A stretch of DNA of 64,000 bases, taken from Ostrea edulis (taxonomy: Eukaryota). The notes under the pieces are model-generated. The model ran no database searches and was not told where the DNA came from. It saw only the letters and a list, made by a program, of their open reading frames with translations. Below are positions 234 to 60,292 of this stretch, in pieces (the first letter of the stretch is position 1; every line of letters starts with the position of its first letter). The position numbers and the translations under genes are program-made. The DNA is taken from contig NC_079167.1 of assembly GCF_947568905.1 (NCBI RefSeq), positions 20,150,001-20,214,000 on the forward strand, read 5' to 3'.

Positions 234-1419
234 TTAAGAGTTATGGCAGCGGTGGTTACGGAGGTAGCGGACACGGAGGGGCACTCGGTGGGGGAGGCTT
301 CGGTGGTTTAGGAGGAGGTGCCCTGGGTGGAGGCCTCGGAAGCGGTGGCGGACTTGGAGGAGGACTAAGCTCCGGCGGACTAGGAGGAATTAGCTATGGT
401 GGGCTAGGAGGACCAGGCTCCGGCGGATTAGGACTAGGCTCTGGCGGACTAGGACTAGGCTCCGGTGGACTAGGAGGAATTAGCTATGGCGGACTAGGAG
501 GACCAGGCTCCGGCGGATTTGGATTAGGTTCTGGTGGTCTAGGAGGATTAAGAGGTCTAGGAGGAGGGTTAAGAGGAGGTTCAGGCCCGGGAGGATTTGG
601 AGGCTACTACCCAGGAGGTGGAAGCCGCAGTTATTACTATTATATTCAATACATCATCTACTTGTTGAGAATATTGGGACCCTTCTATGGAGGTCCTATT
701 GGCGGCGGCGGCGGTTTTCCATATGGTGGAACTGGTGGCATTTCCTACGGAGGGGGATTCCCAAGGGGCGGATTAGGTGGAATTGGAGGCGGATTAGGTG
801 GAATTGGAGGCGGATTAGGTGGAATCGGAGGCGGATTAGGTGGAATGGGCGGCGGATTAGGTGGAATCGGAGGCGGATTAGGTGGAATTGGAGGCGGATT
901 AGGTGGAATCGGAGGCGGATTAGGTGGAATGGGAGGCGGATTAGGTGGAATCGGAGGCGGATTAGGTGGAACTGGTGGTATTTCTTATGGAGGTGGATTA
1001 GGTGGTATCGGCGGTGGCAGTCTCGGTGGATTCGGTGGCATCGGTGGTGGTAGCCTCGGTGGTACTGGAGGCGGTTTCAGTGGTTTAGGTGGTCTCGGCG
1101 GGAGTGGTGGATTTGGTGGACTAGGAGGGGGACTTGGCGGTGGACTAGGAGGAGGACTTGGCGGTGGACTAGGGGGAGGACTTGGCGGTGGACTAGGAGG
1201 TATTGGAAGTGGAGGAGGTTTTGGCCACGGAGGAGGTCACGGGGGATATCCACGTACGGTTCCTTCATACTTTATAAAGTAGTGAAAACAATAAAGCGCA
1301 AAGAAATTTACATTGTAAAATTTTAACGGTACACAAACGAGTACTTCTTACAGATAATATATTCATTTTTCGTATATACATTTCAATGGTTTTATTTTTC
1401 AGGAAAGAAGTACTATTGA
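234..1419 (+). CDS. G1: shematrin-like Gly-rich secreted structural protein, 5'-partial (signal exon upstream of window)
   Basis: Acceptor ttacag| at 233; frame open from 236 (KSYGSGGYGG...), so well upstream of the track's TTG at 662. Internal Tyr block SRSYYYYIQYIIYLLRILGP, then (GGLGGIG)n. Donor c|gtacgg after 1253, acceptor ttttcag| at 1402, micro-exon 1403-1419 gives ...GGYPRKKYY*. AATAAA at 1487. Family label rests on Gly repeats plus a basic/Tyr C-terminus, as in pearl-oyster shematrins (RKKKY-type). Confidence 0.85.
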
Positions 1420-7262: not shown

Positions 7263-7401
7263 NNNNNNNNNNNNNNNNNNNNNNNNNNNNNNNNNNNNNN
7301 NNNNNNNNNNNNNNNNNNNNNNNNNNNNNNNNNNNNNNNNNNNNNNNNNNNNNNNNNNNNNNNNNNNNNNNNNNNNNNNNNNNNNNNNNNNNNNNNNNNN
7401 N
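7263..7401. other. Assembly gap (139 N)
   Basis: Run of N; indicates a scaffolded assembly. Confidence 1.
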
Positions 7402-13124: not shown

Positions 13125-15007
13125 ATGCTGAAGGAATTCTGCCTGCTGCTTTTGGTCACATATGTGGCGGCTACCTATAACATAGGTAAGATTCCATATT
13201 TTCACCTAATCTCTGACCTATTATATAGGTAAGATTCTATATTTTCACTTAATCTCTGACCTATAACATAGGTAAGATTCCATATTTTCACTTAATCTTT
13301 GATAAAGTCCAATATTCAATGATACATTTTTAAACGATTATCATGCTTCTTTACTTTCACAGGTTACCCCTCCACACCAAGCTATCCAACCCCGACCTAC
13401 CCCAACAGTGGATATCGTTATGTCGTCTACGTCCAATACCTCTACTATTTGTACGCTGTGTATGGACCCAACTCCGTACAATATCTCCAGTATTACTACT
13501 ATTTAGTCAGACTGCACATCATCCCATACGGATTCAACTTTGGTGGCGGTGGATATCCTCGGTTTAGTGGTAGCAGAATCATCCCATTAGGAGGTAGAAG
13601 TGGAATTATCCCTATTGGTGGAGGTTCAACAGGTGGATTTCCAATTGGCGGTGGATTAGGAGGTCTTCCACTTGGTGGATCTGGCTCTCCATTAGGAGGT
13701 GGTCTAGGCGGTTTACCTTTGGGAGGCGGAGGTCTTGGAGGAGGATTCCCACTCGGAGGTTCCGGATTCCCAAGTGGTGGTTCAGGTTTCCCTCTTGGAG
13801 GAGGTAGTCTAGGTGGTGGTTTCCCTCTTGGTGGATCTGGCTCTCCATTAGGAGGTGGTCTCGGCGGTTCACCTTTGGGAGGCGGAGGTCTTGGAGGAGG
13901 ATTCCCACTCGGAGGTTCCGGATTCCCAAGCGGTGGTTCAGGTTTCCCTCTTGGAGGAGGTAGTCTAGGTGGTGGTTTCCCTCTTGGTGGATCTGGCTCT
14001 CCATTAGGAGGTGGTCTCGGCGGTTCACCTTTGGGAGGCGGAGGTCTTGGAGGAGGATTCCCTCTCGGAGGTTCCGGATTCCCAAGCGGTGGTTCAGGTT
14101 TCCCTCTTGGAGGAGGTAGTCTAGGTGGTGGTTTCCCTCTTGGTGGATCTGGCTCTCCATTAGGAGGTGGTTTCGGCGGTTCACCTTTGGGAGGCGGAGG
14201 TCTTGGAGGATTCCCACTCGGAGGTTCCGGATTCCCAAGTGGTGGTTCAGGTTTCCCTCTTGGAGGAGGTAGTCTAGGTGGTGGTTTCCCTCTTGGTGGA
14301 TCTGGCTCTCCATTAGGAGGTGGTCTCGGCGGTTCACCTTTGGGAGGCGGAGGTCTTGGAGGAGGATTCCCACTCGGAGGTTCCGGATTCCCAAGCGGTG
14401 GTTCAGGTTTCCCTCTTGGAGGAGGTAGTCTAGGTGGTGGTTTCCCTCTTGGTGGATCTGGCTCTCCATTAGGAGGTGGTCTCGGTGGTTCACCTTTGGG
14501 AGGCGGAGGTCTTGGAGGATTCCCACTCGGAGGTTCCGGATTCCCAAGTGGTGGTTCAGGTTTCCCTCTTGGAGGAGGTAGTCTAGGTGGTGGTTTCCCT
14601 CTTGGTGGATCTGGCTCTCCATTAGGAGGTGGTCTCGGTGGCGGAATTGGTGGTGGCTTTCCTCTTGGAGGATCTGGTTTTCCAAGTGGTGGAAGTGGAT
14701 TTCCATCTGGCGATAGCTCCATAAGTTTCACCAGCAGTGGTTCTTCCTTCTCATCTGGCAGTTCTGGATTCCCAAGTGGGGGATTCCCAGGAAGTGGGGG
14801 ATTCCCAGGAAGTGGGGGATTCCCAGGAAGTGGGGGATTTCCAGGTGGATTTAACGGCGGATATTCAGGAGGCCATGGTGGATATAAACCCAAGAAAGGG
14901 TAATTCAAATCATCCTTATGTCATACGAAATTGCATATCATAAAGTATGCATTATCAATTGTCCATTATCATACACTTAAGAATTCTGATTTTTTTTTTG
15001 TAGGTAG
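13125..15007 (+). CDS. G2: shematrin-like Gly/Pro/Leu/Phe-rich secreted protein, 533 aa
   Basis: Exon 13125-13185 (MLKEFCLLLLVTYVAATYNIG, signal peptide), exon 13363-14899 (YP-rich stretch, Tyr domain, six 51-52 aa repeats, Ser linker, GGFPGS repeats, YKPKK), terminal exon from 15004 (G then TAG). All junctions are GT-AG. AATAAA at 15112. Confidence 0.9.
13173..13301 (+). repeat. Triplicated 43-bp unit containing the G2 exon-2 splice donor
   Basis: acctataacataggtaagattccatattttcacctaatctctg x3 (13173, 13216, 13259). Confidence 0.9.
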
Positions 15008-19946: not shown

Positions 19947-20204
19947 TATGGTAAGGTCAATATTGAACGCTCATACTCGGAATGTTTCGGGCACACACAA
20001 TTTACCCAATGCAAAGTTAGCGTTCAATAAATTCTCAGGATATTGAACGCTAACATTCTCTAAATTTTACGCAGATTTTATAATAGACTATTTATTAGCT
20101 ATATAATAAAGTAAAATATTGAGGAGATAGAAACTTCATTTATTAGAGTTCATATAAAATCACTTAATGACAGGATTCTACATAATCTCAGCATCAAAAT
20201 ATAC

Positions 20205-21028
20205 AGCTATAGAACTGTACCTCTCATCCGTAGCTATAGAACTGTACCTCTAATCCGTAGTTATAGAAATGTAGCTCTAATAAGTAGCTATAGAACTGTA
20301 GCTCTAATACGTAGCTATAGAACTGTAGCTCTAATATGTAGCTATAGAACTGTAGCTCTAATATGTAGCTATATGTAGAACTGTAGCTCTAATACATAGC
20401 TATAGAACTGTAGCTCTAATATGTAGCTATAGAACTGTAGCTCTAATATGTAGCTATATGTAGAACTGTAGCTCTAATACATAGCTATAGAACTGTAGCT
20501 CTAATATGTAGCTATAGAACTGTAGATCTAATACGTAGCTATATGTAGAACTGTAGCTCTAATACGTAGCTATAGAACTGTAGCTCTAATACGTAGCTAT
20601 ATAACTGTAGCTCTAATATGTAGCTATAGAACTGTAGCTCTAATATGTAGCTATAGAACTGTAGCTCTAATATGTAGCTATATGTAGAACTGTAGCTCTA
20701 ATACATAGCTATAGAACTGTAGCTCTAATATGTAGCTATAGAACTGTAGCTCTAATACGTAGCTATAGAACTGTAGCTCTGATAAGTAGCTATAGAACTG
20801 TAGCTCTAATATGTAGCTATAGAACTGTAGCTCTAATATGTAGCTATAGAACTGTAGCTCTAATATGTAGCTATAGAACTGTAGCTCTAATATGTAGCTA
20901 TAGAACTGTAGCTCTAATACATAGCTATAGAACTGTAGCTCTAATATGTAGCTATATGTAGAACTGTAGCTCTAATACGTAGCTATACATGTAGAACTGT
21001 AGCTCTGATACGTAGCTATAACTGTAGA
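20205..21028. repeat. Satellite, ~30 x 27 bp (some 31 bp)
   Basis: Unit tagctatagaactgtagctctaatatg; some copies carry a 4-bp tatg insertion. Confidence 0.95.
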
Positions 21029-23704: not shown

Positions 23705-23862
23705 TTTGACTTCCGTGTTCGGAATAGTACGAGTCATCAGAATCAATCAAAGCTTTTTGTACCGAACTGATGCCAGGTCGTTGATCGGTGTGTATATAAA
23801 GGGACCGCTCTCCTGAACCATCACAGTTTGAATCAACATCCCAGAGAAGGACCAACAAACAG
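23705..23862 (+). promoter_or_regulatory. G3 promoter and non-coding exon 1
   Basis: ACTTCCGTGTTC (23709), TCATCAGAATCAATC, TATATAAAGGGACCGCTCTCC (23793), donor cag|gtaaaa after 23862, acceptor ttgtag| at 24276. Confidence 0.75.
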
Positions 23863-24282: not shown

Positions 24283-25400
24283 ATGTTGAAGGAAGTTTGT
24301 TTTCTGTTAATGGCCACATACGTGGCGGCAACCTATGGCACAGGTATAACTGCAGAATTTCTCTGAATCCTTGATAAGTTCCGTGTTCAATAGAACATTT
24401 TTGTATTACATGCCCGTTTCTTTACTTTCACAGGTTACCCCTCACAACCAAGCTATCCAGCCCCGACCTACCCCAACAGTGGATATCGTTATGTCATCTA
24501 CGTCCAATACCTCTACTACTTGTACGCTGTGTACGGTCCCAACTCTGTACAATACATTCAGTATTACCAATACTTGATCAGATTGCACATCATTCCTCAA
24601 GGATTCTCATTTGGATCTGGCGGATTCCCAGGCGGTATTGGCGGAAGTAGAATTATAGGGGGCGGTAGCGGCATAACCCCAATCGGAGGAGGATATATCC
24701 CAGGTGGTGGTTTCCCAGGAAGCAGCAGAGGATTTCCCGGTGGTAGAGGAGGAAGCTCTCTGAGTTTCTCAAGTGGATCTGGATTTTTCTCTGGATCCGG
24801 AGGCGGTTTCCCAAGTGGCGGATTTCCTAGCGGTGGATTCCCCGGCGGACTCTCCTCCGGCGGATTCCCCGGTTCCGGAAGCGGTTTCCCAAGTGGCGGA
24901 TTTCCTAGCGGTGGATTCCCAGGCGGACTTTCCTCCGGCGGATTCCCCGGTGGATCTTTCCCCGGATCTGGAAGTGGTGGGTTCCCAGGCGGACTCTCAT
25001 CTAGCAGTTTTTCTAGCGGTAGTTCCTTCCTGAGCAGCGGCAGTTTAGGTGGTGGTCCTGGCGGTATCGGAGGTGGTCCTGGAGGAATCGGTGGAGGAAT
25101 AGGAGGAATTGGAGGAGGAATAGGAGGAGGAATTGGAGGAGGAATAGGAGGAGGAATTGGAGGAGGAATAGGAGGAATTGGAGGAGGAATTGGAGGAGGA
25201 ATAGGAGGAATTGGAGGAGGAATAGGAGGAGGAATTGGAGGAGGAATAGGAGGAAGAATTGGAGGCAGAAAGAAACTTGGTAACCTTATTTTTTTTTTTG
25301 ATAATTGCTCAAAGGTTATGATAGTTTTTTTCTAAAAATTCCAAAGCAAGATTTTGAAAAAGAAAAGTTTTACTATATTTTTATTTTAGGTTTTTACTAA
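24283..25400 (+). CDS. G3: shematrin-like GGFP-repeat secreted protein, 305 aa
   Basis: Exons 24283-24343 (MLKEVCFLLMATYVAATYGTG), 24434-25279 and 25390-25400; ends ...RKKLGFY*. Phase-1 GT-AG introns. AATAAA at 25479. Confidence 0.92.
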
Positions 25401-25714
25401 ACTGTTCCCGGATTGACTGAGATGGATTTGGCCTTGAACTTGCATTTCATGTGATTTGCTTTTTTGTTAGGTTGTGGAATAAACAAATGATGCCCAAATT
25501 GTCTTGTATTAATTTTGCTTAAGGTGGTTCCAGTATTGTTAAAACTGGACTATTGATCGAATTTTGTATAACAGAATGTTTCACAAGAAACACATTGACG
25601 CAAGCTTCAAAGAAAGGCCGCAAATAATTTGTTTTATTTAACCGATCGTATAAAATGTTAATTTTGCAAGAGAACAAGTATCAATGATGCAGATTACTTT
25701 CATCATATTATATT

Positions 25715-26090
25715 GTTAAAATTTGATCCCCTATTGTCGTCTCGTCTTTACAGGGCTATGATTTGAATAAATTGGAATCTACACTACCTAATGATGCTTG
25801 CATATATCGATACAACTTATCATGACCCTGCTGGCACTGAGAAAACGATTTCCCCATATATTGCATGTGATAGTTGGATCTCCTATTGAAGTCCCATTGT
25901 AGGCTCTGTGGCCATAATTTGAACAAACTTAAATCTGTAATACCTGTAGATGCTTGCATATTAATACGTCTAATCATGACAATGTTTCCCTTGCATATTC
26001 AAATATAAAACTTTGTTCCTCATTTGTGAACCCACCATACCCCCGGGACTATCATTTGAACAACTTGAATCTAGATTTTTCAGGGTCAAT
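25715..26090. repeat. Degenerate Cg170-like satellite monomers (paralog at ~37770-38160)
   Basis: tttgatcccctattg...atgatttgaacaaacttgaatctacactacct motifs, also seen in the array at 52190-53000. Confidence 0.65.
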
Positions 26091-26148
26091 CATAGTTTAT
26101 CTAAAGGTGTGACGCGTTCCCTTTATTATTATGAAGGCACAGTAGGGA

Positions 26149-26936
26149 CTAGCTGCAATAATGTAGGTATATTTTATCCGATTTTTTTATTCTGACGTTT
26201 TGGGGATAGGGATAGGGCTACAATTCCATAGGATCTCCGTAATGGTGCAAAATAATTTCATGAATAACCGATAATAAGCTCCGTGTATTTGTCCCAAATG
26301 TTGTTTACACAAAAAGGAGTACCAACTTTGTGCTTGGGCATGTATAATAAAGGTGTTTTTCATAAAAAATCATGTACAGCATGCAAAATTCTTCGTCTGC
26401 TCCGCCAAGCTTGTTATCGCAAGATCTCTGTAAAACTTAAACATTAACAATCTGCGCGAAAATGTAGTTACTCGAGCCACTCCGACAAAGATAGGAAAAT
26501 CATTTGGTTGCAGAAAGAATTTACACTCTGCTGTTCGTTTTTAACTTGATATCAAATCTAAACCTTTTTTATACAGACGAAATAGCTTTCTCCTCCGTAC
26601 TTGTCCATTGATGTAAATACCGCCTTACATGTATATGGCATATGCAAATAACTTGATAATCGGAAGTTCAAACTTCAGTACATCAACCATGGCGCACAAA
26701 TTGGAATATATCGAAATTGTTGAAAACGGTAGAATAGAGCCTCACAAATCGTAAATTGCAGGTTGTAAATTTATATATTGACTAAGAAACATAGAATATC
26801 ATTTTATTTACGTAAAGAAATTCAGCAAATGTTTAGAATGATCGAAAATGTTGCGAGGGTGAATCACTCCCGCATTTGCACCATTACGGAGATCCTAAGG
26901 AGTTGTAGCCCCCTCACCCCCACATTATTGCAGCTA
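26149..26936. mobile_element. MITE with two layers of inverted repeats (paralog at ~38216-39002)
   Basis: Outer (c)tagctgcaataatgt / acattattgcagcta. Inner ~38-bp IR gggctacaattccataggatctccgtaatggtgcaaa (26215) / ttgcaccattacggagatcctaaggagttgtagcccc (to 26912). Confidence 0.65.
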
Positions 26937-27243
26937 ATGAAGACGTAGTATATCCCTTGGCGTAATGTGTAAAACGCGACTTCTGCATGTTTGCTGAAAG
27001 CCCTACCTTGTACTGTTCTATGTCTGAGAAACTGAATTAAACACGATTTTTGTTGAACGTTTATCTAAGACAGGGTAAACATACATAATTTCATGAAAAT
27101 TCTAAATATATGTCTCTTTGAAAATACAGAGAGTATTTAGGGATTTATTTGAATCCATCCGTGTTTTAGATGATGCCGAACACCGTAGATACAATGATAT
27201 CCCGAACGAACATGGAAACGACTCTATTTGATCAGGATTGGAT

Positions 27244-28841
27244 TGGATTCTTGAAAAGATTGTTGCGAAACGTTTGGATCATCACATAGAGTTGAATCAT
27301 TTACACAACAATGTACAGTCAGCATACCGTGCCTGCCATTCAACGGAGACAGCTCTACTTCGTGTCCACCACGACATTGTAGCAGCATTAGATTGTGGTT
27401 TCAGCGTTGCATTAATCATGTTAGATCTTTCGGCGACCTTTAATGTCATCGATCATCCTATTCTGATAAGACGTCTTGAGTTTGCTTTTGGTATTTCTGG
27501 CTCGGTCCTTAATTGGATTAAGTCATATTTCTCAGAGAGGACCCAAAAAGTGGCCATAGGATCTACCTTCTCCGATGATTTCCGTCTCAATTGCGGCGTA
27601 CCACAAGGATCTGTCCTAGGACCTCGGCTCTATGCCATTTTCTCCAAACCTATTGGTGGAATATGTCGTAAAAACAATGTTCTACATCACTGTTACGCAG
27701 ATGACACACAAGCCCATCTAGTCTTCAAACCTAAACATGACTGGCAAAATACCGCTAGCCACTTTGAGGCTTGTATGGATGAAATAAAGATGTGGATGTC
27801 CGCTAACATGCTACATGTAAAATTAAATCAGGACAAAACAGAGCTCATTGTTTTTTCACCGAAAACCATAGTCACTGACTCACCATCGTACCATCTGAAC
27901 TTTGCCGAAACTATCATCAGTGAAATACCGTTTGTGAAGAATCTAGATGTATGGTTTGATAAGACACTTTGCATGCAAAAGCAAATCTCATCTGTGTCTC
28001 GTGCTTGCTATCATCAACTACGTAACATCGGACGAATACGGTCGCTCATCACAGAAGATGCGTGCAAGACTCTAGTATGTGCCCTCGTGGCATCTCGGCT
28101 CGACTACGCCAATGATCTTCTTTTCGGAATTAACACAACCAACTTGGCAAAACTGCAGTGGATACAGAATATGGTAGCTCGAATCATCTCTCGTACCAAG
28201 AGAAGTGATCACATTACTACAGTGCTGATTTCTTTACATTGGCTTCCTATTGACAGGTGCAGCCCAATACAAAATCTCTACGTATATAAGGTGATCCATA
28301 AGATGGCACCAAAATACTTGGAGGAGGTGATCACTGTTTACCAACCAAATCGTTCCCTAAGATTTAAAAATTCACTGACATTAGTTAGATCTAGATGTCG
28401 AACCTCCACATGTGGAAACAGGCGCTTGGATGTGGCAGCAGCTACACTCTGGAACTCTCTGCCTTGTCAGAATTTGAACATTTTTAAAAAAAACACATCT
28501 TTTTAGACTTGCATATTACTAGTATTATAGGTGGTTAAATCTTTATGGTTTCTTTACCATCATTTTAACTTGACCTTTTCAATTGTATAATTGTATATTT
28601 ATTTCAACTATTGTATTTTATATCAGTTGATTGTACGGCGTGGAACTTTTTTCATACACATCATGTTTTAGATTTTAGTAATTTTACTTCACATTATGGA
28701 TGTTTTTCTAGCACTGTTTTGATATTACAATTTCCTTTTACTACTTTTATAACATGCTGTATCATTTTTATTGTGTACAGCACTTTAGAGTGGTTATTCA
28801 TAGTCATATAGGGCGCTATATAAATAAGTATTATTATTATC
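27244..28841 (+). mobile_element. 5'-truncated L2/CR1-group LINE with an RT ORF
   Basis: ORF 27238-28506 has QSAYR..HSTETALL, LDLSATF, GVPQGSVLGP, YADDTQ and HIT.VL.SLHWLP motifs. (TAT)n tail at ~28829-28840. Absent at the paralogous site 41281-41300. Confidence 0.9.
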
Positions 28842-32305: not shown

Positions 32306-34275
32306 ATTCATACCATTCGATTCGATGCACCGATTACAAATTCCGGATTTCGGTTCGGTTCGGTTTAGATTTTACTTACACCAAAACAACAAATATGTCG
32401 TCCGAGTGATGTTGAAAACATGTGGTTTTTTATGCAACGGAGATTTAAATCACTACTGTGTTAAGAGTTAGCATTTTCACCACTCAGATACCAACAGAAT
32501 ATGGTCCGTAAGATCATTGCAGTTTATCTTTACATGACATATAGCATTTCTGTCAGTGGTGGAGTGAAATCAACATCGTAGGTAATGACACAGATTTGAC
32601 AGTTAACATGAAAGAAGTAAATCAATAAAGGAGAGATTTTCAAAGACTCTCAATTGATAGAATTTTTGCATATCAATGAAAACGATATCATATAGATTTT
32701 TAGATTCACTATAGATTTGTTTAATAATCCAAAACTTATGCAGCACATTAATATAACAAATTTTGATAGACTGTCAGTGTTTTCTTTTTTCTATCAAAGT
32801 TATAAAATGCCATTATGAATAGATATGATGTTTACAAATGACAACATATAGTTATATAACTTGAATTAAATCAAATCAAATATGCTACTCATTAAAATTG
32901 TTAATTTTTGTGGTGTCATTAGATAAATTGGACCTAACATGAAGCGAATCGAAAATAACCGAACCGTGCTGTTCTGAATCGAAACCGAACCGAATCGAGC
33001 TAACCCTGAATCGTCCCAGCCCTACTGAATATGGTGATGTTTTTGGACTCTTACCTGTTAAACAAGAAATCAAGATTGATCCATTGGTCCCCCCGTTGAT
33101 ACATTGACCTCGTCGTGTGCCGTTTACATTCCGTGACAAAATCAAGGACGAACTTGATCACATGGAACAAACTGGTGTTATCATTCAACAAAACGAACCC
33201 ACAGCATGGGTTAATTCCATGGTGACTGTGTTTAAACCAAATGGAAAATTCCGTATTTGTACAGATCCTAAGAATCGTAACAAAGCCATTCACAGAGAAC
33301 ATTTCCCGCTCAAGACCAATGAGGACGTCATACAGCGGATCACTGATCCAAGCAATTTTCTAAATTAGACGATACATCGGGCTTTTGGCAAATTGGGCTT
33401 ACAGAAGAAAGTTCGAAATTCTGCACCTTCAATACTCCATATGAGCGCTATAGGTTTACTATGCTACCATTTGGCATAAACTCTGCTTCTGAAATTTATC
33501 AACGCACAATTTCAGATATGGTGAGGGATCTAGAAGGATATGAAGCAATAATTGATGACATACTGATATGGGGAAAAGACATCAAAGAACAATATAGCAG
33601 ACTAAAAGGTCATGAATCGCATCCATGACTACAATCTGAAACCGAGTCCAGAAAAGTGTAAGTTTCGTAAGAGCCACGTCGCATTTGTAGGTCATGTACT
33701 TACTCTTAAAGGGACCCAACCCAATCCTGAGAAAATTCGTGCTGTTAAAGACATGCCTACTCCACAGAATATTTCGGAACTTCAAACATTTCTTGGTTTT
33801 ATACAATACCTTGGAAAGTTCTTACCAAACTTATCTGAAGTGAGTTCACCACTCAGAACACTCCCAAAAAAGGATTTCTGCTTCCACTTTGACAAAACAC
33901 AAGAAGAAAGCTTTCAAACGTTAAAGTGTCTCGTCAGTAACACACCTGTCCTGCGTTATCACGAAAAAGCCACTAACCTTGGCTGTAGATGCCAACTCAG
34001 AGGGCCTTGGTGCTGCTCTTGTTCAGGAAGGTCAGCCTGTTGCATGTGGGTCACGTGCTTAAACTAAAAGTCAGCAAAACTATGCCCAGATTGAAAAGGA
34101 GGCCTTAGCTACAACTTTATATGGTATGAATGTACAAAATTTCATCAGTTTGATCGCCACATATTGGTGGGGAGTGATCACAAACCACTGTAGACAATTT
34201 TTCGGAAATCCCTTTATCAAGCGCCTTCTCGACTATAGTTACCACTGCTCATCTTACAGCATTATGACATTGAGA
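31385..34275 (+). mobile_element. Decayed Ty3/Gypsy gag-pol remnant, copy 1
   Basis: EEVVRDRIVIG (gag), two CCHC-like knuckles, LDTG protease motif, RT (PRRVP, WVNSMV, FWQI, LPFG, IDDILIWG) and RNase H (GLGAAL, YAQIEKEAL), broken by stops, frameshifts and deletions. No LTRs recognised. Confidence 0.9.
32267..33024. mobile_element. hAT-type MITE, 758 bp, perfect 8-bp TSD
   Basis: TAGGGCTG...CAGCCCTA termini. CTGAATAT duplicated at 32259-32266 and 33025-33032. The paralogous site near 44528 is empty (tctgaatatggtgatg). Confidence 0.95.
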
Positions 34276-36282: not shown

Positions 36283-37471
36283 ATGCTGAAGGAAGTTTGT
36301 TTTCTGTTAATGGCCACATACGTGGCGACAACCTATGGCACAGGTATAACTGCAGAATTTCTCTGAATCCTTGATAAGTTCCGTGTTCAATAGAACATTT
36401 TGATATTGCATGCCCGTTTCTTTACTTTCACAGGTTACCCCTCACAACCAAGCTATCCAGCCCCGACCTACCCCAACAGTGGATATCGTTATGTCGTCTA
36501 CGTCCAATACCTCTACTACTTGTACGCTGTGTACGGTCCCAACTCTGTACAATACATTCAGTATTACCAATACTTGATCAGATTGCACATCATTCCTCAA
36601 GGATTCTCTTTTGGATCTGGCGGATTCCCAGGTGGATTCCCAGGTGGTATTGGTGGAAGTAGAATTATAGGGGGCGGTAGCGGCATAACCCCAATCGGAG
36701 GAGGATATATCCCGGGTGGTGGTTTCCCAGGAAGCAGCGGAGGATTTCCCGGCGGTAGAGGAGGAAGCTCTCTGAGTTTCTCAAGTGGATCTGGATTTTT
36801 CTCTGGATCCGGAGGCGGTTTCCCAAGTGGCGGATTTCCTAGCGGTGGATTCCCCGGCGGACTCTCCTCCGGCGGATTCCCCGGTTCCGGAAGCGGTTTC
36901 CCAAGTGGCGGATTTCCTAGCGGTGGATTCCCAGGCGGACTCTCCTCCGGTGGATTCCCCGGTTCCGGAGGCGGTTTCCCAAGTGGCGGATTTCCTAGCG
37001 GTGGATTCCCAGGCGGACTCTCCTCCGGCGGATTCCCCGGTTCTGGAAGCGGTTTCCCAAGTGGCGGACTTCCTAGCGGTGGGTTCCCAAGTGGACTCTC
37101 TTCCGGCGGATTCCCCAGCGGATCTTTCCCCGGATCTGGAAGTGGTTTTCCAAGTGGTGGATTCCCAGGCGGACTCTCCTCTAGCAGTTTTTCTAGCGGT
37201 AGTTCCTTCCTGAGCAGCGGCAGTTTAGGTGGTGGTCCTGGTGGTATTGGAGGTGGTCCTGGAGGAATCGGTGGAGGAATTGGAGGAGGAATAGGAGGAG
37301 GAATTGGAGGAGGAATAGGAGGAGGAATAGGAGGCAGAAAGAAACTTGGTAATCTTATTGTTTGTTTGTTTTATAATTGGTTAAAGGTTATCATAGTTTT
37401 TTCTAACAATTGCAAAGCAAGATTTTGAAAAAGAATAATTTTACTATATTTTTATTTTAGGTTTTTACTAA
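36283..37471 (+). CDS. G4: shematrin-like GGFP-repeat secreted protein, 328 aa
   Basis: Exons 36283-36343, 36434-37348 and 37461-37471; ends RKKLGFY*. AATAAA at 37549. Confidence 0.92.
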
Positions 37472-39065: not shown

Positions 39066-41071
39066 AACTATACCAAGCCCTATTATAAACAATCATTACA
39101 GTGCCTAGATATAGACCATCCACCAACGTGTTCTTGTTATTCATCTTCTTTCAACTATAGTCCAGCTGGACATGTCATTACTGGGGATGTTGATATAGTT
39201 GAAAATGAGGACCTCGAATTACTTATTCTAAAGGTCCTAAATACAGAGAACCTCGGTCTTTTAATTGGCAACAGAACTTCATCTCTATTATGAATTCTGT
39301 CGAAGATTATGCCAGACATGGGCTAAATATGAAAAAGAACTTGATACATTGTCAGAATGGTTTAAAAGCATAAGAGGAATATTAAAATCCCGCATTAGAT
39401 ATCTTAAAACAAAAATACGTACCATCTATCCTTCTGTGTTTAGTAAACCAGAAGTGATAAAAGAATTAGATAGGTTACATGAGGGATATGTTTTGGTTCC
39501 AGCTGACAAAGCTTGTAACAACATTGTCTTTGTTTGTAAGGCTCATTATTACAACTGTATTTTAAACGAACCTGGCATTAATTCAACTTTTGGTAATCGT
39601 ACTTATACTCCAACAGTCCTTCCAAAAGATGAAATTCTTCAAAACCATGCTTCAGTTTTAGACACATTTAATATCCCAGTCAATGTGTCGAATGAATATG
39701 AGTTACCATACCTATACTGGATTCCTAAACTACATAAAACCCCTTACAAAGATACATTGCTGGAACCATTAAGTGCTCTACCAAGCCCCTATCTTTGCTC
39801 CTCACGAAAATATTAACAGCTGTGAAGGAGAAGCTTCAAACGTACTGTGCAACTACATATGCCAGAAGTGGTGTTAATCAAATGTGGATTCTAAAAAATT
39901 CTATAGAACTCTTAGTAAACTTGAAATCGCAAAACTTAAAAAAAACAAAACAACTTTTCTCAAATCAATAACAACAAAACCTATGACTTTTCAACACTAT
40001 ACACGACCATTCCTAACGATAAATTAAAGACTAGACTTTTTGACATCATAGAAAGTTGCTTCTTCAACAAAAATGGAAAAAGGAAATTTTCATATCTAGT
40101 GATCAGTCATCCAAAAACTTACTTTGTTAAACAACACTCTAATTCCACGCACAAGTACTATGAACTTGAAATTAAAAATATGCTAGAGTTTCTCATTGAC
40201 AATATCTTCATGGTCTTTGGTGATCAGGTTTTCCAACAGTCTGTTGGAATTCCCATGGGCACGAATTGTGCTCCTTTGTTTGATGACCTGTTTCTATATT
40301 CATATGAAGCAGAATTTATTCAAAAACTTCTACGTGAGAAGAAAAAATCTCTTGCTGTGGCCTTCAATTCGACATTTAGATATATCGACGACGTTTTGTC
40401 TATTGACAATAATAACTTTCGTTCATATGTCGATTCGATATATCCCTGAGAGCTCGAAATAAAAGACACCACAGAGTCGTCCACTTCTGCTTCATACTTA
40501 GATATTTTATTGAAAGTAGACATTAACGGCAAACTGACAACTCAACTATGTAACAAACCGGATGATTTCAGCTTCTCCATCGTCAGCTTCCCATATCTAT
40601 GTAGAAATATTCCATTATCACCTGCATATGATGTTTATATTTCTCAACTGATTCGATACGCAAGAGCTTGTTCTGCGTATAGTCAGTTATTAAATCTAGG
40701 CAAGCTACTGACATTGTTGATGGTACAGGGATTTCAACAGTCTCGATTGAAGTCATTTCGCAAATTCTATGGTCGTTATAACGATCTAGTTCGTCAATAC
40801 AACCTATAATTGGGTCAAATTCTGTCTGACGTGTTTCATACCGATTGTTAGGCCGTTCTTGGTACACTGATTTTGACTACGAATAACTCCATTTACCTTA
40901 TCAGGATATAGTGCTCACGGCGGTTGTGACCTATCGACAGGAGATGCTTACTCCTCCTAGGCACCTAATCCCACCTCTGGTGTGTCCAGGGGTCCATGTT
41001 CGCCCAACTATCTATATTGTATTGCTTATAGGAGTTATGAGATTGATCACTGTTCGTTATCTTCACCTTTC
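39066..41071 (+). mobile_element. 5'-truncated Penelope-like retroelement, probably Naiad clade
   Basis: Frameshifted ORF with a CSC motif (39129-39137), GHVITGD, KGPKYREP, LYWIPKLHK, DFSTLYT, GIPMGTNCAP and FRYIDD. RT runs to the end of the ORF with no downstream GIY-YIG, the Naiad/Chlamys arrangement. atctt is duplicated at 39061-65 and 41072-76; the paralogous site near 27003 is empty. Confidence 0.85.
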
Positions 41072-43629: not shown

Positions 43630-45837
43630 AGACACCTAGAATTTTAAAAGCACAATGAAAGCATGTGATATGATTAGGCGAGAAGTGAGGAAGTGGTTCG
43701 AGATCGAATTGTCATTGGTGTGAAATCACATAAAATACGTGAGAAACTCATAATGCTGGGTTTGATTTGACTCTACAGAAGTCATTAGACATTGCATGAC
43801 TTCTTCACCTTTCATGAACAATCCACAACTCAAGCTAGACAAATGTTTGGTGAGGATACATGAGTTCATGCCATTCGAAACAAACTGCAGTCTAAAGGTA
43901 AGTTTAGGTAATCCACCAAACCAATCACGGCTGTTCTCCAAAACAACAATAAACAACAACAGAAATCTAATTCGCATCATATTAAGCTACAGCAAATAGA
44001 TGATTGTTCACGTTGTGGATACACACACAGTACTTCATCATGTTCAGCCAAAGGGAACAAGTGCCACAAATGTTGTCGACTTGGTCACTTTGCGAAAAAG
44101 TGTCGTTAAAGTGGACACTGTAGATAACTCTGATACCGAATAACTATTTCTAGGTTACATTGATACGGACATCAATATGCTGGATACAGAGCGGACCGAG
44201 TCCATAGAAATTAACAAGCCAGCATGCTTCAGTTGGACACTGGTAATAAGTGTAATGTGCTACCATTGAAAACTTTCAATGAACTAGGCTTAAAACATCA
44301 CTAACTTGCTTCATCCAAAGCAAACATGAGATCTAAAGTGGAACCTGTTGGAAACAGTATACTCCAATGTAAATATGAAGACCGCGTGACTGAAATCTCT
44401 TTTGAGGATGTTGACCTACCTTCAGAACCTACTCTAGGATCTGCCTCTTGCTCAGTGCTGGGACTTGTTAGGTGAGCTTACAAACTTGACTATTCAGAAA
44501 CAACAAACATTCCTAAAGACATTCAATCTGAATATGGTGATGTTTTTTATGACTCTTACCTGTTAAACAAGAAATCAAGATTGATCCATTGGTCCCCCAG
44601 TGATACACCCACCTCGTCGTGTGCCGTTACCATCCCGTGACAAAATTAAGGACGAACTTGATCACTTTCACATGGAACAAACTGGTGTTATCGTTCAACA
44701 AAACAAATCCACAGCATGGGTTAATTCCATGGTGACTGTGCTTAAACCAAATGGAAAATTCCATATTTGTACAGATCCTAAGAATCTTAACAAAGCCATT
44801 CACAGAGAACATTTCCCGCTCAAGACCAATGAGGACGTCATACAGCGGATCACTGATCCAAGGAATTTTCTAAATTAGACGATACATCGGGCTTTTGGCA
44901 AATTGGGCTTACAGAAGAAAGTTCGAAATTCTGCACCTTCAATACTCCATATGGGCGCTATAGGTTTACTATGCTACCATTTGGCATAAACTTTGCTTCT
45001 GAAATGTATCAACGCACAATTTCAGATATGGTGAGGGATCTAGAAGGATATGAAGCATTAATTGATGACATACTGATATGGGGAAAACACATCAAGGAAC
45101 AAGATAACAGACTAAAAGGTGTCATGAATCGCATCTGTGAGTACAATCTGAAACCGAGTCCTGAAAAGTGTAAGTTTCGTAAGAGCCACGTCGCATATGT
45201 AGGTCATTTACTTACTCCTGAAGGGATCCAGCCCAATCCTGAGAAAATTCGTGCTGTTAAAGACATGCCTGCTCCACAGAATATTTCGGAACTTCAAACA
45301 TTTCTTGGTTTTATACAATACCTTGGAAAGTTCTTACCAAACTTATCTGAAGTGAGTTCACCACTCAGAACACTCCTGAAAAAGGATTTCTGCTTCCACT
45401 TTGACAAAACACAAGAAGAAAGCTTTCAAACGTTAAAGTGTCTCGTCACTAACACACCTGTCCTGCGTTATTATGACCCGAAAAGCCACTAACCTTGACT
45501 GTAGATGCTAGCTCAGAGGGCCTTGGTGCTGCTCTTGTTCAGGAAGGTCAGTCTGTTGCATGTGGGTCACGTGCTTTAACTAAAAGTCAGGAAAACTGTT
45601 GAAAAGGAGGCCTTAGCTACAAATGTATATGGTATGAATGTAACAAAATTCAACAGTATGTATTTGGTAGCCGCATATTGGTGGAGAGTGTTCACAAACC
45701 ACTCTAGACAATTTTGCTTTGGTCACTTCTCAAAGTGGCCTGAATTTGCTAAACTTCAAAACCAAACCAGTGGGAACAATGTGTTACATTTGAAAAGTAT
45801 CCTTTTACGTTATGGGATATCGGACAATGGTCCCTAA
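43630..45837 (+). mobile_element. Decayed Ty3/Gypsy gag-pol remnant, copy 2, with an integrase fragment
   Basis: Paralogous to 31385-34275 without the hAT MITE. Ends with FSKWPE...LLRYGI.SDNGP (integrase core). Confidence 0.9.
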
Positions 45838-49900: not shown

Positions 49901-51044
49901 ATGCTGAAGGAAGTTTGTTTTCTGTTAATGGCCACATACGTGGCGGCAACCTATGGCACAGGTATAATTGCTGAATTTTTCTGAATCCTTGATAAGTTCC
50001 GTGTTCAATAGAACATTTTTGTATTACATGCCCGTTTCTTTACTTTCACAGGTTACCCCTCACAACCAAGCTATCCAGCCCCGACCTACCCCAACAGTGG
50101 ATATCGTTATGTCGTCTACGTCCAATACCTCTACTACTTGTACGCTGTGTACGGTCCCAACTCTGTCCAATACATTCAGTATTACCAATACTTGATCAGA
50201 TTGCACATCATTCCTCAAGGATTCTCTTTTGGACCTGGCAGATTCCCAGGCGGATTCCCAGGTGGTATCGGTGGAAGTAGAATTATAGGGGGTGGTAGCG
50301 GCATAACCCCGATCGGAGGGGGGTTTATCCCGGGTGGTGGTTTTCCAGGAAGCAGCGGAGGATTTCCCAGCGGTAGCAGAGGAAGCTCTCTGAGTTTCTC
50401 TAGCGGATCTGGTTTTTTCTCTGGATCCGGAAGTGGTTTCCCTAGTGGTGGATTCCCAGGCGGACTTTCCTCCGGCGGATTCCCCAGCGGATCTTTCCCT
50501 GGATCCGGAAGTGGTTTCCCAAGTGGTGGATTACCTAGTGGTGGATTCCCAGGAAGTATCTCTTCTGGTAGCATTTCCAGCGGATCTGGTTTTTTCTCCG
50601 GATCCGGAAGCGGTTCCCCAAGTGGTGGATTCCCAGGCGGACTCTCCTCTGGTGGCTTCCCCAGCGGATCTGATCTTTTCCCTGGATCTGGAAGCGGTTT
50701 CCCTAGTGGTGGATTCCCAGGAGGACTCTCCTCCGGTGGATTCCCCAGCGGATCTGGTTTTCCAAGCGGTGGATTATCCAGTGGAGGATTTCCAGGCGGA
50801 CTCTCCTCTAGCAGTTTTTCTAGCGGTAGTTCCATCCTGAGCAGCGGCAGTTTAGGTGGTGGTCCTGGTGGTATTGGAGGTCGTCCTGGTGGTATCGGAG
50901 GAGGAATTGGAGGCAGAAAGAAACTTGGTAATCTTATGGTTCTTTATCATTGCTTTAAGATTTATGATATTTCTTTCTAAAGATTCAAAGCAAGACTTTG
51001 AAAAACATAAATGTTACTATATTTGTATTTCAGGTTTTTACTAG
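49901..51044 (+). CDS. G5: shematrin-like GGFP/Ser-rich secreted protein, 315 aa
   Basis: Exons 49901-49961, 50052-50927 and 51034-51044; ends RKKLGFY*. AATAAA at 51122. Confidence 0.92.
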
Positions 51045-59159: not shown

Positions 59160-60292
59160 ATGCTGAAGGAATTTTGTTTTCTGTTAATGGCCACATACGT
59201 GGTGGCAACCTATGGCACAGGTATAATTGCTGAATTTCTCTGAATCCTTGATAAGTTCCGTGTTCAATAGAACATTTTGATATTGCATGCCCGTTTCTTT
59301 ACTTTCACAGGTTACCCCTCACAACCAAGCTATCCAGCCCCGACCTACCCCAACAGTGGATATCGTTATGTCGTCTACGTCCAATACCTCTACTACTTGT
59401 ACGCTGTGTACGGTCCCAACTCTGTCCAATACATTCAGTATTACCAATACTTGATCAGATTGCACATCATTCCTCAAGGATTCTCTTTTGGATCTGGCGG
59501 ATTCCCAGGTGGTATTGGTGGAGGTAGAATTATAGGGGGTGGTAGCGGCATAACCCCGATCGGAGGAGGATATATCCCAGGTGGTGGTTTCCCAGGAAGC
59601 AGCGGAGGATTTCCCGGCGGTAGAGGAGGAAGCTCTCTGAGTTTATCAAGTGGATCTGGATTTTTCTCTGGATCCGGAGGCGGTTTCCCAAGTGGCGGAT
59701 TTCCTAGCGGTGGATTCCCAGGCGGACTCTCCTCCGGCGGATTCCCCGGTTCCGGAAGCGGTTTCCCAAGTGGCGGATTTCCTAGCGGTGGATTCCCAGG
59801 CGGACTCTCCTCCGGCGGATTCCCCGGTTCCGGAAGCAGTTTCCCAAGTGGCGGATTTCCTAGCGGTGGATTCCCAGGCGGACTTTCCTCCGGCGGATTC
59901 CCCGGTGGATCTTTCCCCGGATCTGGAAGTGGTGGATTCCCAGGCGGACTCTCCTCTAGCAGTTTTTCTAGCGGTAGTTCCTTCCTGAGCAGCGGCAGTT
60001 TAGGTGGTGGTCCCGGCGGTATCGGAGGTGGTCCTGGAGGAATCGGTGGAGGAATTGGAGGAGGAATAGGAGGAGGAATTGGTGGAGGAATAGGAGGAGG
60101 AATTGGAGGAGGAATAGGAGGAGGAATTAGAGGCAGAAAGAAGCTTGGTAATCTTGCATTTCTTTTTCAATTTCTTACAAGATTTAAAGGTTTCTGATAC
60201 CTTATTTTTGTCAAAGGCAAATCAAAATGAATTTTATAAAGTAAGAAGATATGACATAGATGTGTATTTTTATATTTCCAGGTTATTACTGA
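59160..60292 (+). CDS. G6: shematrin-like GGFP-repeat secreted protein, 302 aa
   Basis: Exons 59160-59220 (MLKEFCFLLMATYVVATYGTG), 59311-60147 and 60282-60292; ends RKKLGYY*. AATAAA at 60372. Confidence 0.92.

What the first reader, a model, noticed from the sequence alone, without database searches (positions are those of the whole stretch)
24434..24598. Conserved Tyr-rich domain: 15 Tyr in 47 residues with a helix-GPNS-helix-like pattern
Seen: GYPSQPSYPAPTYPNSGYRYV(V/I)YVQYLYYLYAVYGPNSVQYIQYYQYLIRLHIIP is nearly invariant at DNA level in G3-G6 and well kept in the otherwise divergent G2. It has two VQY(L/I) pseudo-repeats around GPNS. G1 keeps only a second-half-like block (YYYYIQYIIYLLRILGP). 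Inference: the only part likely to fold; a candidate self-assembly, dityrosine/DOPA cross-linking or chitin-stacking module that I do not recognise as a named domain.
Basis: partly seen in the sequence, partly recalled or inferred. Interest (0 to 1): 0.7.

Follow-up and report, generated by a model that had tools for sequence, protein, structure and literature searches.

The report
Tyrosine-rich head of oyster glycine-rich proteins
The tyrosine-packed stretch is a real, selectively conserved N-terminal module, matching no known protein domain, in a tandem family of secreted glycine-rich structural proteins found so far only in oysters; it probably makes the rubbery chains stick together and cross-link.

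Summary
At 24434-24597 the main exon of gene G3 encodes GYPSQPSYPAPTYPNSGYRYVIYVQYLYYLYAVYGPNSVQYIQYYQYLIRLHIIP, with 15 Tyr in 47 residues. The block recurs in G2 and G4-G6, in part in G1, and in a seventh gene (G7) 2.5 kb past the window.

All seven genes share one plan: a signal-peptide exon, a long exon (Tyr block plus Gly-rich repeats), and in six of them a mini-exon giving a basic or Tyr C-terminus (RKKYY, RKKLGFY). An RNA contig with a poly(A) tail confirms the last splice of G3.

The near-identity of G3-G6 is mostly concerted evolution: intron 1 is 93-98% identical, the last intron only 56-90%. Real constraint shows elsewhere:
- G2 versus G3-G6 gives dN/dS 0.16-0.20. In the GPNS-to-HIIP half, dS is about 1.7 and dN 0.085.
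- The G7 core is 32/35 identical to two uncharacterised Magallana gigas proteins. These are the only hits among 1.84 billion representative proteins.

Pfam, PDB sequences and the literature give no match. AlphaFold2 predicts helix-GPNS-helix (pLDDT about 85-88) for both paralogue classes, while classical propensities favour strands.

Nearly all Tyr lies in this block, and all Phe lies outside its 58-residue head. My inference is a self-association and oxidative cross-linking node of shematrin- or abductin-like matrix proteins. This function is untested.

The parts
24283..24343 (+). G3 signal-peptide exon (MLKEVCFLLMATYVAATYGT plus the first base of a Gly codon), phase-1 donor
   Evidence: The exon/GT donor/phase is the same in G2-G7 and, just upstream of the window, in G1.
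24344..24433 (+). G3 intron 1 (90 nt, GT..AG)
   Evidence: It is 93-98% identical among G3-G6. This splice is inferred and not covered by an RNA contig; the annotated M. gigas relatives show the same signal-to-domain join.
24434..24468 (+). Pro/Tyr-rich lead of the module (G)YPSQPSYPAPTY
   Evidence: Weakly conserved: dN about equals dS against G2 and 13-14/36 identical between G7 and M. gigas.
24469..24597 (+). Conserved Tyr-rich core PNSGYRYVIYVQYLYYLYAVY-GPNS-VQYIQYYQYLIRLHIIP; predicted helix / GPNS turn / helix
24598..25279 (+). Gly-rich low-complexity part of G3 exon 2 (GGFPSGGFPGGLSS 78-nt units, then GGGI 12-nt units), ending GGRKKL plus the first base of a Gly codon
25280..25389 (+). 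G3 last intron (110 nt, GT..AG)
   Evidence: An RNA-library contig in run X3 joins 25278/9 to 25389/90; sequence.
25390..25498 (+). G3 terminal mini-exon: completes Gly, then Phe-Tyr-stop (25392-25400); 3'UTR with AATAAA at 25478-25483; poly(A) addition at 25498
   Evidence: (contig ends in A8 at 25498).
13363..13527 (+). G2 copy of the Tyr module (17 Tyr in its 58-residue head; protein 87% identical to G3)
36434..36598 (+). G4 copy of the Tyr module
50052..50216 (+). G5 copy of the Tyr module
59311..59475 (+). G6 copy of the Tyr module (DNA identical to G5)
629..682 (+). G1 partial module SYYYYIQYIIYLLRILGP (first-half-like), embedded between Gly-rich stretches

Best explanation
The Tyr block is the conserved N-terminal module of a tandem family of seven secreted structural proteins, so far seen only in oysters. 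The mature proteins are basic (pI 9.6-9.9) and 32-44% Gly, with no Cys and almost no acidic residues. Each gene has a signal-peptide exon, a large exon encoding the module plus fast-evolving Gly-rich X-Gn-X repeats, and, except possibly in G2, a mini-exon adding a basic or Tyr C-terminus.

The module has a loosely conserved Pro-rich lead and a core of about 35 residues, (Y/V)xQYLYYLY..x.GPNS...QYYQYL.R..I.P.G. The core probably folds as a two-element hairpin around the invariant GPNS turn. AlphaFold2 predicts two helices.

Inferred mechanism: nearly all Tyr sits in this head, with one or two more at the C-terminus, while the repeats use Phe, Ile or Leu. The head would therefore act as the chain-end node. 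It first self-associates through aromatic and aliphatic packing. Mantle tyrosinase or peroxidase then locks it covalently (DOPA-quinone or dityrosine tanning). This ties the flexible Gly-rich chains into an insoluble, elastomer-like shell-matrix, periostracal or ligament network.

Shown here: the gene structure, transcription and the 3' splice of G3, the composition, protein-level constraint, conservation in Magallana gigas, and the lack of any known domain match. Inferred: the fold, self-association, cross-linking, and the tissue and material.
For: - Gene plan and seven paralogues.
- An RNA contig with GT..AG joint and poly(A) tail confirms the last intron and the RKKLGFY end of G3.
- Aromatic partition: 15-17 Tyr and 0 Phe in the 58-residue head, against 1-3 Tyr and 21-40 Phe in the rest. 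D+E is 0-1, Cys is 0, pI is 9.6-9.9.
- Constraint: G2 versus G3-G6 gives dN/dS 0.16-0.20, and 0.06-0.09 in the core. Codons 34-54 have dS 1.7 and dN 0.085.
- Cross-genus conservation: the G7 core is 32/35 identical to M. gigas K1RBK9, but the lead only 13-14/36.
- AlphaFold2 gives a helical hairpin in two paralogue classes at pLDDT 83-89.
- No known domain matches.
- Precedents from the literature: Gly/Tyr regions of KRMPs are thought to polymerise by quinone tanning (PMC3191542, PMC3120837). Shematrins have Gly-rich repeats and an RKKKY-type C-terminus (PMC3896809). Abductin has Gly-rich repeats with Tyr at the chain extremities, which some propose form dityrosine links (PMC9999432).
Against: - There are no tissue, proteomic or biochemical data. 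The only RNA evidence is one small library labelled 'mollusc metagenome'.
- The homodimer prediction scored 0.00, which counts as no verdict.
- Chou-Fasman propensities favour beta strands (mean Pb 1.35-1.41 against Pa 0.92-0.99). The helical model also rests on alignments of only 7-8 sequences.
- Part of the conservation is gene conversion.
- G1 keeps only half the module, so the full hairpin is not essential to every family member.
Confidence: 0.55

Rival explanations
1. The block is a beta-hairpin or cross-beta (amyloid-like) nucleus, not a helical hairpin. Two Tyr/Val/Ile/Gln-rich strands around a GPNS beta-turn would stack between molecules as a steric zipper and seed fibrillar assembly of the Gly-rich chains. 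This rivals the fold, not the assembly role.
For: Mean Chou-Fasman Pb is 1.35-1.41 against Pa 0.92-0.99 for both elements, and the strand prediction is continuous on both sides of GPNS. Pro-Asn is a classical turn pair (established knowledge). AlphaFold2 cannot model intermolecular cross-beta, and its alignments here were very shallow.
Against: AlphaFold2 gives helices with pLDDT 83-89 independently for the G3 and G7 classes. In helix 2, Gln39, Gln42, Gln45 and Arg49 fall at i, i+3, i+6 and i+10, which would form a polar stripe on a helix (read from the sequence).
Confidence: 0.25
2. The conservation is non-functional. It reflects only recent duplication and gene conversion within the array, and the block is simply another low-complexity stretch.
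For: Among G3-G6, intron 1 (93-98%) and synonymous sites (dS 0-0.05) are nearly as identical as the block. The last intron of the same genes is 56-90% identical, and the flanks give discordant groupings. Between G2 and G4, codons 1-33 and the last ~17 nt of the intron have low dS (0.13-0.16), suggesting an older conversion tract.
Against: Codons 34-54 of G2 versus G4 have saturated dS (1.7) with dN 0.085. The core is 32/35 identical between G7 and a different oyster genus while the adjacent lead is 13-14/36. G7 shares 22/35 core residues with G3 although the Pro-rich lead is only 7/32 identical.
Confidence: 0.05
3. The module is a surface-binding domain that anchors the Gly-rich chain to chitin or to calcite faces through stacked Tyr rings and hydroxyls. 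It would not be a self-association or cross-link node.
For: Aromatic-rich faces are the usual carbohydrate-stacking surfaces (established knowledge). Tyr, Gln, Asn, Ser and Arg are listed as carbonate or mineral-interacting residues in PMC5519542. The protein is secreted and basic.
Against: It does not match any chitin-binding family in Pfam. It has no Cys, unlike the type-2 and peritrophin chitin-binding domains. A core this hydrophobic (Val, Ile, Leu between the Tyr) is more typical of buried packing than of a solvent-exposed binding face.
Confidence: 0.12

Closest known systems
Shematrins (Pinctada glycine-rich prismatic-layer framework proteins)
   Same: Signal peptide; long Gly-rich X-Gn-X repeats with a hydrophobic X; a basic protein; a multigene family with rapid repeat turnover; a short basic C-terminal signature ending in Tyr (RKKKY, RRKKY and similar, PMC3896809). 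Here the ends are RKKYY (G1), RKKLGFY (G3-5) and RKKLGYY (G6).
   Different: Shematrin Tyr is spread through GnY repeats. Here the repeats use Phe, Ile or Leu, and Tyr is confined to a discrete N-terminal block. Neither the word searches nor the profile search of 1.84 billion representatives retrieved any Pinctada protein. Shematrins are described as lineage-specific to pearl oysters (PMC4944945). Homology is therefore not shown; the resemblance is architectural.
Magallana (Crassostrea) gigas uncharacterised proteins K1RBK9 and A0A8W8MLB6
   Same: These are true homologues of the module: E 9e-30 and 1.5e-9, core 32/35 identical to G7, the same signal-to-module join, a Gly/Ser/Pro-rich tail, and a KKSGPY end like the predicted QKSGPY of G7.
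   Different: They are of the G7 type only; no G2-G6-type relative was found. K1RBK9 is a fused model of two tandem genes. Neither has a name, a Pfam domain or a mention in the searchable literature.
Abductin (scallop hinge-ligament elastomer)
   Same: A small secreted protein; about 58% Gly; repeats of di- and tri-Gly separated by single hydrophobic residues ([GGFGGMGGGX]; G1 has GGLGGMGGGLGGIGGG). Tyr lies at the chain extremities and is speculated to form dityrosine cross-links (PMC9999432).
   Different: [quoted passage not shown] The proteins here have no Cys, 8-11% Pro, Met only in G1, and a 15-17-Tyr structured head. No sequence match was found.
KRMPs (Pinctada lysine-rich matrix proteins)
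   Same: A Tyr-bearing region proposed to polymerise by quinone tanning, and a short basic-Tyr C-terminus (PMC3120837, PMC3191542, PMC3896809).
   Different: KRMPs are about 10 kDa, with a Lys/Trp-rich basic domain straight after the signal peptide and a Gly/Tyr low-complexity tail. Here there is no Lys-rich domain, and the Tyr region is a non-repetitive conserved block.
Terminal domains of spider silk spidroins (analogy only)
   Same: A small, conserved, foldable helical domain at the end of a long, fast-evolving Gly-rich repetitive protein, thought to control storage and assembly (general knowledge).
   Different: Spidroin terminal domains are five-helix bundles of 110-130 residues with no Tyr enrichment. 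There is no sequence or fold match; Foldseek found only generic hairpins with E above 1.

Membership tests
Shematrin family | N-terminal signal peptide | tested here: met
   A 19-20-residue hydrophobic leader on its own exon in all seven genes. Judged by eye; no signal-peptide predictor was run.
Shematrin family | Gly-rich repetitive domains of X-Gn-X type with hydrophobic X | tested here: met
   32-44% Gly; 78-nt and 12-nt tandem units encoding GGFPSGGFPGGLSS and GGGI.
Shematrin family | C-terminal RKKKY / RRKKY / RRRKY-type signature (PMC3896809) | tested here: inconclusive
   Similar but not identical. G3-5 end RKKLGFY (splice confirmed by RNA contig for G3). G1 RKKYY, G6 RKKLGYY and G7 QKSGPY are predicted splices. 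G2 ends KPKKG.
Shematrin family | Detectable sequence homology to Pinctada shematrins | tested here: not met
   No Pinctada protein was retrieved by the word searches or the profile search of the module. The low-complexity repeats cannot be tested reliably.
Shematrin family | Expression in mantle edge and presence in the prismatic shell layer | not testable with these tools
   The only transcript evidence comes from an unlabelled small RNA library.
Abductin | [quoted passage not shown] | tested here: not met
   Only G1 has GGLGGMGGG-like units. There is no Cys in the five mature proteins modelled (G2-G6), and the N-terminus is Tyr/Pro-rich.
KRMP family | Lys/Trp-rich basic domain directly after the signal peptide | tested here: not met
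   The mature N-terminus is TGYPSQPSYP...; there is no Lys or Trp in the first 58 residues.
Any Pfam-A domain or solved structure | Significant profile match | tested here: not met
   Pfam gave 0 families for G1, G2, G3, G4 and G7 and only a sub-threshold chance hit for K1RBK9. The best PDB sequence hit has E 1.4 and the best Foldseek hit E 1.8.

The most novel reading that the evidence does not exclude
The block is a previously undescribed, oyster-specific 'tyrosine-zipper' terminal domain. It would be a small helical hairpin that keeps an elastomeric Gly-rich protein soluble during secretion. It would then drive end-to-end oligomerisation and site-specific Tyr cross-linking, making it the molecular node of an oyster elastomer such as the hinge ligament, the periostracum or the cement. 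In role it would be analogous to spidroin terminal domains but unrelated to them.
Probability: 0.2. Interest if true: 0.7.

Novelty: new variant of a known kind. Interest (0 to 1): 0.45.

Why it matters
Mollusc shell-matrix and ligament proteins are mostly fast-evolving low-complexity sequences with almost no conserved, foldable parts. That makes their assembly hard to study. This is a short, conserved, non-repetitive module that can be made synthetically (about 45 residues). It holds nearly all the tyrosine of its protein, and in the G7 lineage its core has stayed almost unchanged between two oyster genera.

If it is the assembly and cross-linking node, it offers a direct experimental handle on how oysters make Gly-rich chains insoluble. 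It could also serve as a compact Tyr-rich cross-linking tag for protein materials. If it is not, the finding remains one more lineage-restricted shell-protein family, and the specialist interest is moderate rather than high.

Tried and rejected
- Word-index protein search with the module and with the whole exon 2: no hits. A third search with M. gigas K1RBK9 residues 184-250 found only K1RBK9 itself.
- ESM Atlas feature search: no usable hit.
- Foldseek against the PDB: only generic antiparallel helical hairpins, E 1.8 or worse.
- PDB sequence profile search: Mediator subunit Med31 at E 1.4-3.1, taken as chance.
- Homodimer prediction of the 60-residue module, two copies: score 0.00, 'no answer'. 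This is not evidence either way.
- The look-up of encoding contigs for the two M. gigas proteins: not on record, so the M. gigas locus could not be inspected.
- Own-genome searches with the G3 and G7 modules: only the seven clustered genes. Weak hits on contig C6 are a tandem repeat translated by chance.
- Literature: no paper holds K1RBK9 or the motifs YLYYLY (in a protein context), QYYQYL or YIQYLYY. Supplements of two oyster shell-proteome papers hold neither the accession nor the motifs. A third paper has no supplement text held. McDougall et al. 2013 on shematrin evolution is not held.
- A possible 5'UTR exon at 23800-23862 has no counterpart upstream of the other genes and was left open.
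- Runs X7 and X8 proved to be DNA, because their contigs cross intron-exon borders. Run X1 covers only the Gly-rich part.
- Earlier notes of this scan on this genome held nothing bearing on this locus.

Full report
**What is there**

The window is G000:C4:20150001-20214000 of an 895-Mb genome. One RNA run holding the locus is labelled 'mollusc metagenome'. The only homologues of the module are from the Pacific oyster Magallana gigas. The organism is therefore very probably an oyster. This is inference; the species name is withheld.

The 165-base finding is the start of the main exon of a gene I call G3. The ATG is at 24283. The signal-peptide exon ends at 24343 with a phase-1 GT donor. A 90-nt intron ends at 24433. 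Exon 2 then reads (G)YPSQPSYPAPTYPNSGYRYVIYVQYLYYLYAVYGPNSVQYIQYYQYLIRLHIIP and continues into Gly-rich repeats.

The stated end is one base too far. The only other Tyr-dense six-frame windows are the paralogues and two simple repeats.

**Gene family**

There are six + strand genes in the window and a seventh 2.5 kb beyond it (L006). They form the whole family in this genome. Scanning 80 kb on either side, and the whole genome with the G3 and G7 modules, found nothing more.

All seven have the same plan: a signal exon, a phase-1 intron and a large exon. The open frame of exon 2 runs on into junk. However, an RNA-library contig joins 25279 to 25390 across a GT..AG intron and ends in a poly(A) run at 25498, 15 nt after an AATAAA. 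The true C-terminus of G3 is therefore ...GGRKKLGFY.

The same donor and acceptor pattern predicts these ends:

| Gene | Predicted C-terminus |
|---|---|
| G1 | RKKYY |
| G4, G5 | RKKLGFY |
| G6 | RKKLGYY |
| G7 | QKSGPY |
| G2 | KPKKG |

The annotated M. gigas relative ends KKSGPY, which supports the G7 prediction.

Joined exon models were built only inside a local script, to compute composition.

**Composition**

- Mature G2-G6 are 26-45 kDa, 32-44% Gly, pI 9.6-9.9, with no Cys and 0-1 acidic residues.
- The aromatic residues are strictly partitioned. The first 58 residues hold 15-17 Tyr and no Phe. The rest holds 1-3 Tyr and 21-40 Phe.

**Is the conservation more than gene conversion?**

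Among G3-G6 it is largely not:

| Segment | Identity among G3-G6 |
|---|---|
| Exon 1 | 95-98% |
| Intron 1 | 93-98% |
| Tyr block | 98.8-100% |
| Last intron | 56-90% |
| 3' exon of G6 against the others | 75% |

Synonymous divergence in the block is dS 0-0.05. The flanks group the genes discordantly: upstream G4 pairs with G5, downstream G3 pairs with G4. This mosaic is the signature of concerted evolution of the 5' part, so the DNA-level invariance that drew attention is not in itself evidence of constraint.

Constraint appears at greater distances.

- G2 against G3-G6 gives dS about 0.5, dN 0.08-0.09 and dN/dS 0.16-0.20, falling to 0.06-0.09 over residues 12-54.
- The signal is uneven (intron). 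Codons 1-33, with the last ~17 nt of the intron, have dS 0.13-0.16, probably an older conversion tract. Codons 34-54 (GPNS to HIIP) have saturated dS of about 1.7 with dN 0.085.
- G7 shares 22/35 core residues with G3, but its Pro-rich lead is only 7/32 identical, and its repeats are of a different type.
- Most tellingly, the G7 core is 32/35 identical to M. gigas K1RBK9 while the adjacent lead is 13-14/36.

The invariant skeleton is (Y)xQYLYYLY...GPNS...QYYQYL.R..I.P.G. G1 keeps a single element, which aligns best to the first half rather than the second.

**Known domain?**

None was found.

- Pfam gives nothing for G1, G2, G3, G4, G7 or the M. gigas proteins.
- A profile of the module against 1.84 billion representative proteins returns only the two uncharacterised M. 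gigas entries. Pinctada shematrins, KRMPs and abductins were therefore not matched at E up to 0.001.
- PDB sequence search, Foldseek and the ESM Atlas give only chance-level rows.
- The motif strings do not occur in a protein context in the searchable literature.

**Fold**

AlphaFold2 on shallow alignments gives helix 16-33, a GPNS loop and helix 38-49 at block-mean pLDDT 88-89 for G3. For G7 it gives the same hairpin at 83-87. The Pro-rich lead is disordered.

Classical propensities point the other way. Mean Pb is 1.35-1.41 against Pa 0.92-0.99, and GPNS is a good beta-turn. A beta-hairpin or cross-beta reading therefore remains a live rival. A two-copy complex prediction returned no verdict.

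**Mechanism (inferred)**

The architecture matches the class of Gly-rich, repetitive, basic framework or elastomer proteins of bivalves:

- Shematrins have a signal peptide, X-Gn-X repeats and an RKKKY-type end (PMC3896809).
- KRMPs have a Gly/Tyr region thought to polymerise by quinone tanning (PMC3120837, PMC3191542).
- Abductin has [GGFGGMGGGX] repeats with Tyr at the chain extremities, speculated to form dityrosine (PMC9999432).

What differs here is that Tyr has been removed from the repeats and concentrated in a conserved, non-repetitive, probably folded head, plus the last residue or two. The simplest reading is a chain-end node. The head would first associate non-covalently through Tyr, Leu, Val and Ile packing. 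Oxidative Tyr chemistry would then fix it, linking flexible Gly/Pro/Phe chains into an insoluble network. I put this at about 0.55.

That the block is a constrained protein module of a secreted structural protein I put at about 0.85-0.9. Binding to chitin or mineral is a weaker alternative.

**Novelty and score**

The protein class is known and the family is lineage-restricted, as such families usually are. The module itself is undescribed, has no Pfam, PDB or literature counterpart, and is unusual in composition and conservation. I class it as a new variant of a known kind, interest 0.45. It is a good, cheap experimental target but not a categorical surprise.

Noticed in passing
L006:1126-3144 (G000:C4:20216250-20218300, about 2.3 to 4.3 kb past the window end): A seventh family member (G7), divergent from the others: signal MMMMVKIGVLLSVMAATVFAKNL, module SSSYYYIQYLYYLYRTQGPNSSSFQQYYQYLSRRGILPRG, about 480 residues of GGSPLGG/SGLPGLSGG repeats, and a Tyr/Ser-rich tail. 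It is the closest copy to the M. gigas proteins.
   Followed up: yes
window 13363-14903 (G2) and 234-1250 (G1): The repeat types differ completely between paralogues: G1 GGLGGIGGG/GGLGGMGGG, G2 GGSGFPLGGGSLGGGFPLGGSGSPLGGGLGG, G3-6 GGFPSGGFPGGLSS plus GGGI, G7 GGSPLGGLSGLSGG. G1 and G2 also carry a GHGG(Y) motif near the C-terminus. G1 has a Gly-rich stretch before its half-module.
   Followed up: partly
window 24619-25143: Run X1 (organism A, coded; possibly RNA) has contigs at word depth 260-390 over the Gly-rich part only, with 1-7 differences per contig and a different sequence upstream of 24619. This suggests a highly represented related gene or allele in another sample or species.
   Followed up: no
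window 20198-20987: A 27-bp satellite (28.5 copies, 89% matches; higher-order period 85), unit AATATGTAGCTATAGAACTGTAGCTCT. It mimics a Tyr-rich ORF on the minus strand.
   Followed up: partly
window 27238-28506, 33612-34067, 39265-39816, 44971-45492: Retroelement ORFs lie between the paralogues: Pfam RVT_1 at 27238-28506 (E 1e-20) and at 44971-45492 (E 5e-9). The ORFs at 33612-34067 and 44971-45492 share a long near-identical C-terminal stretch, so the same element family is inserted in two inter-gene spacers.
   Followed up: partly
window 25700-27000: Very high contig depth (hundreds to more than 1500) and many variant joints in all laid runs show a highly repeated dispersed element immediately downstream of G3.
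   Followed up: no
window 7263-7401: A run of 139 N (assembly gap or masked).
   Followed up: no
window 23800-23862: A possible 5'UTR exon of G3 ending in CAG|GTAAAA. A conserved acceptor (ttttgtag|ATCACCATG) just before the ATG of G3-G6 implies an upstream non-coding exon. This candidate has no counterpart upstream of the other genes, and G3's upstream flank is unrelated to that of G4-G6.
   Followed up: partly
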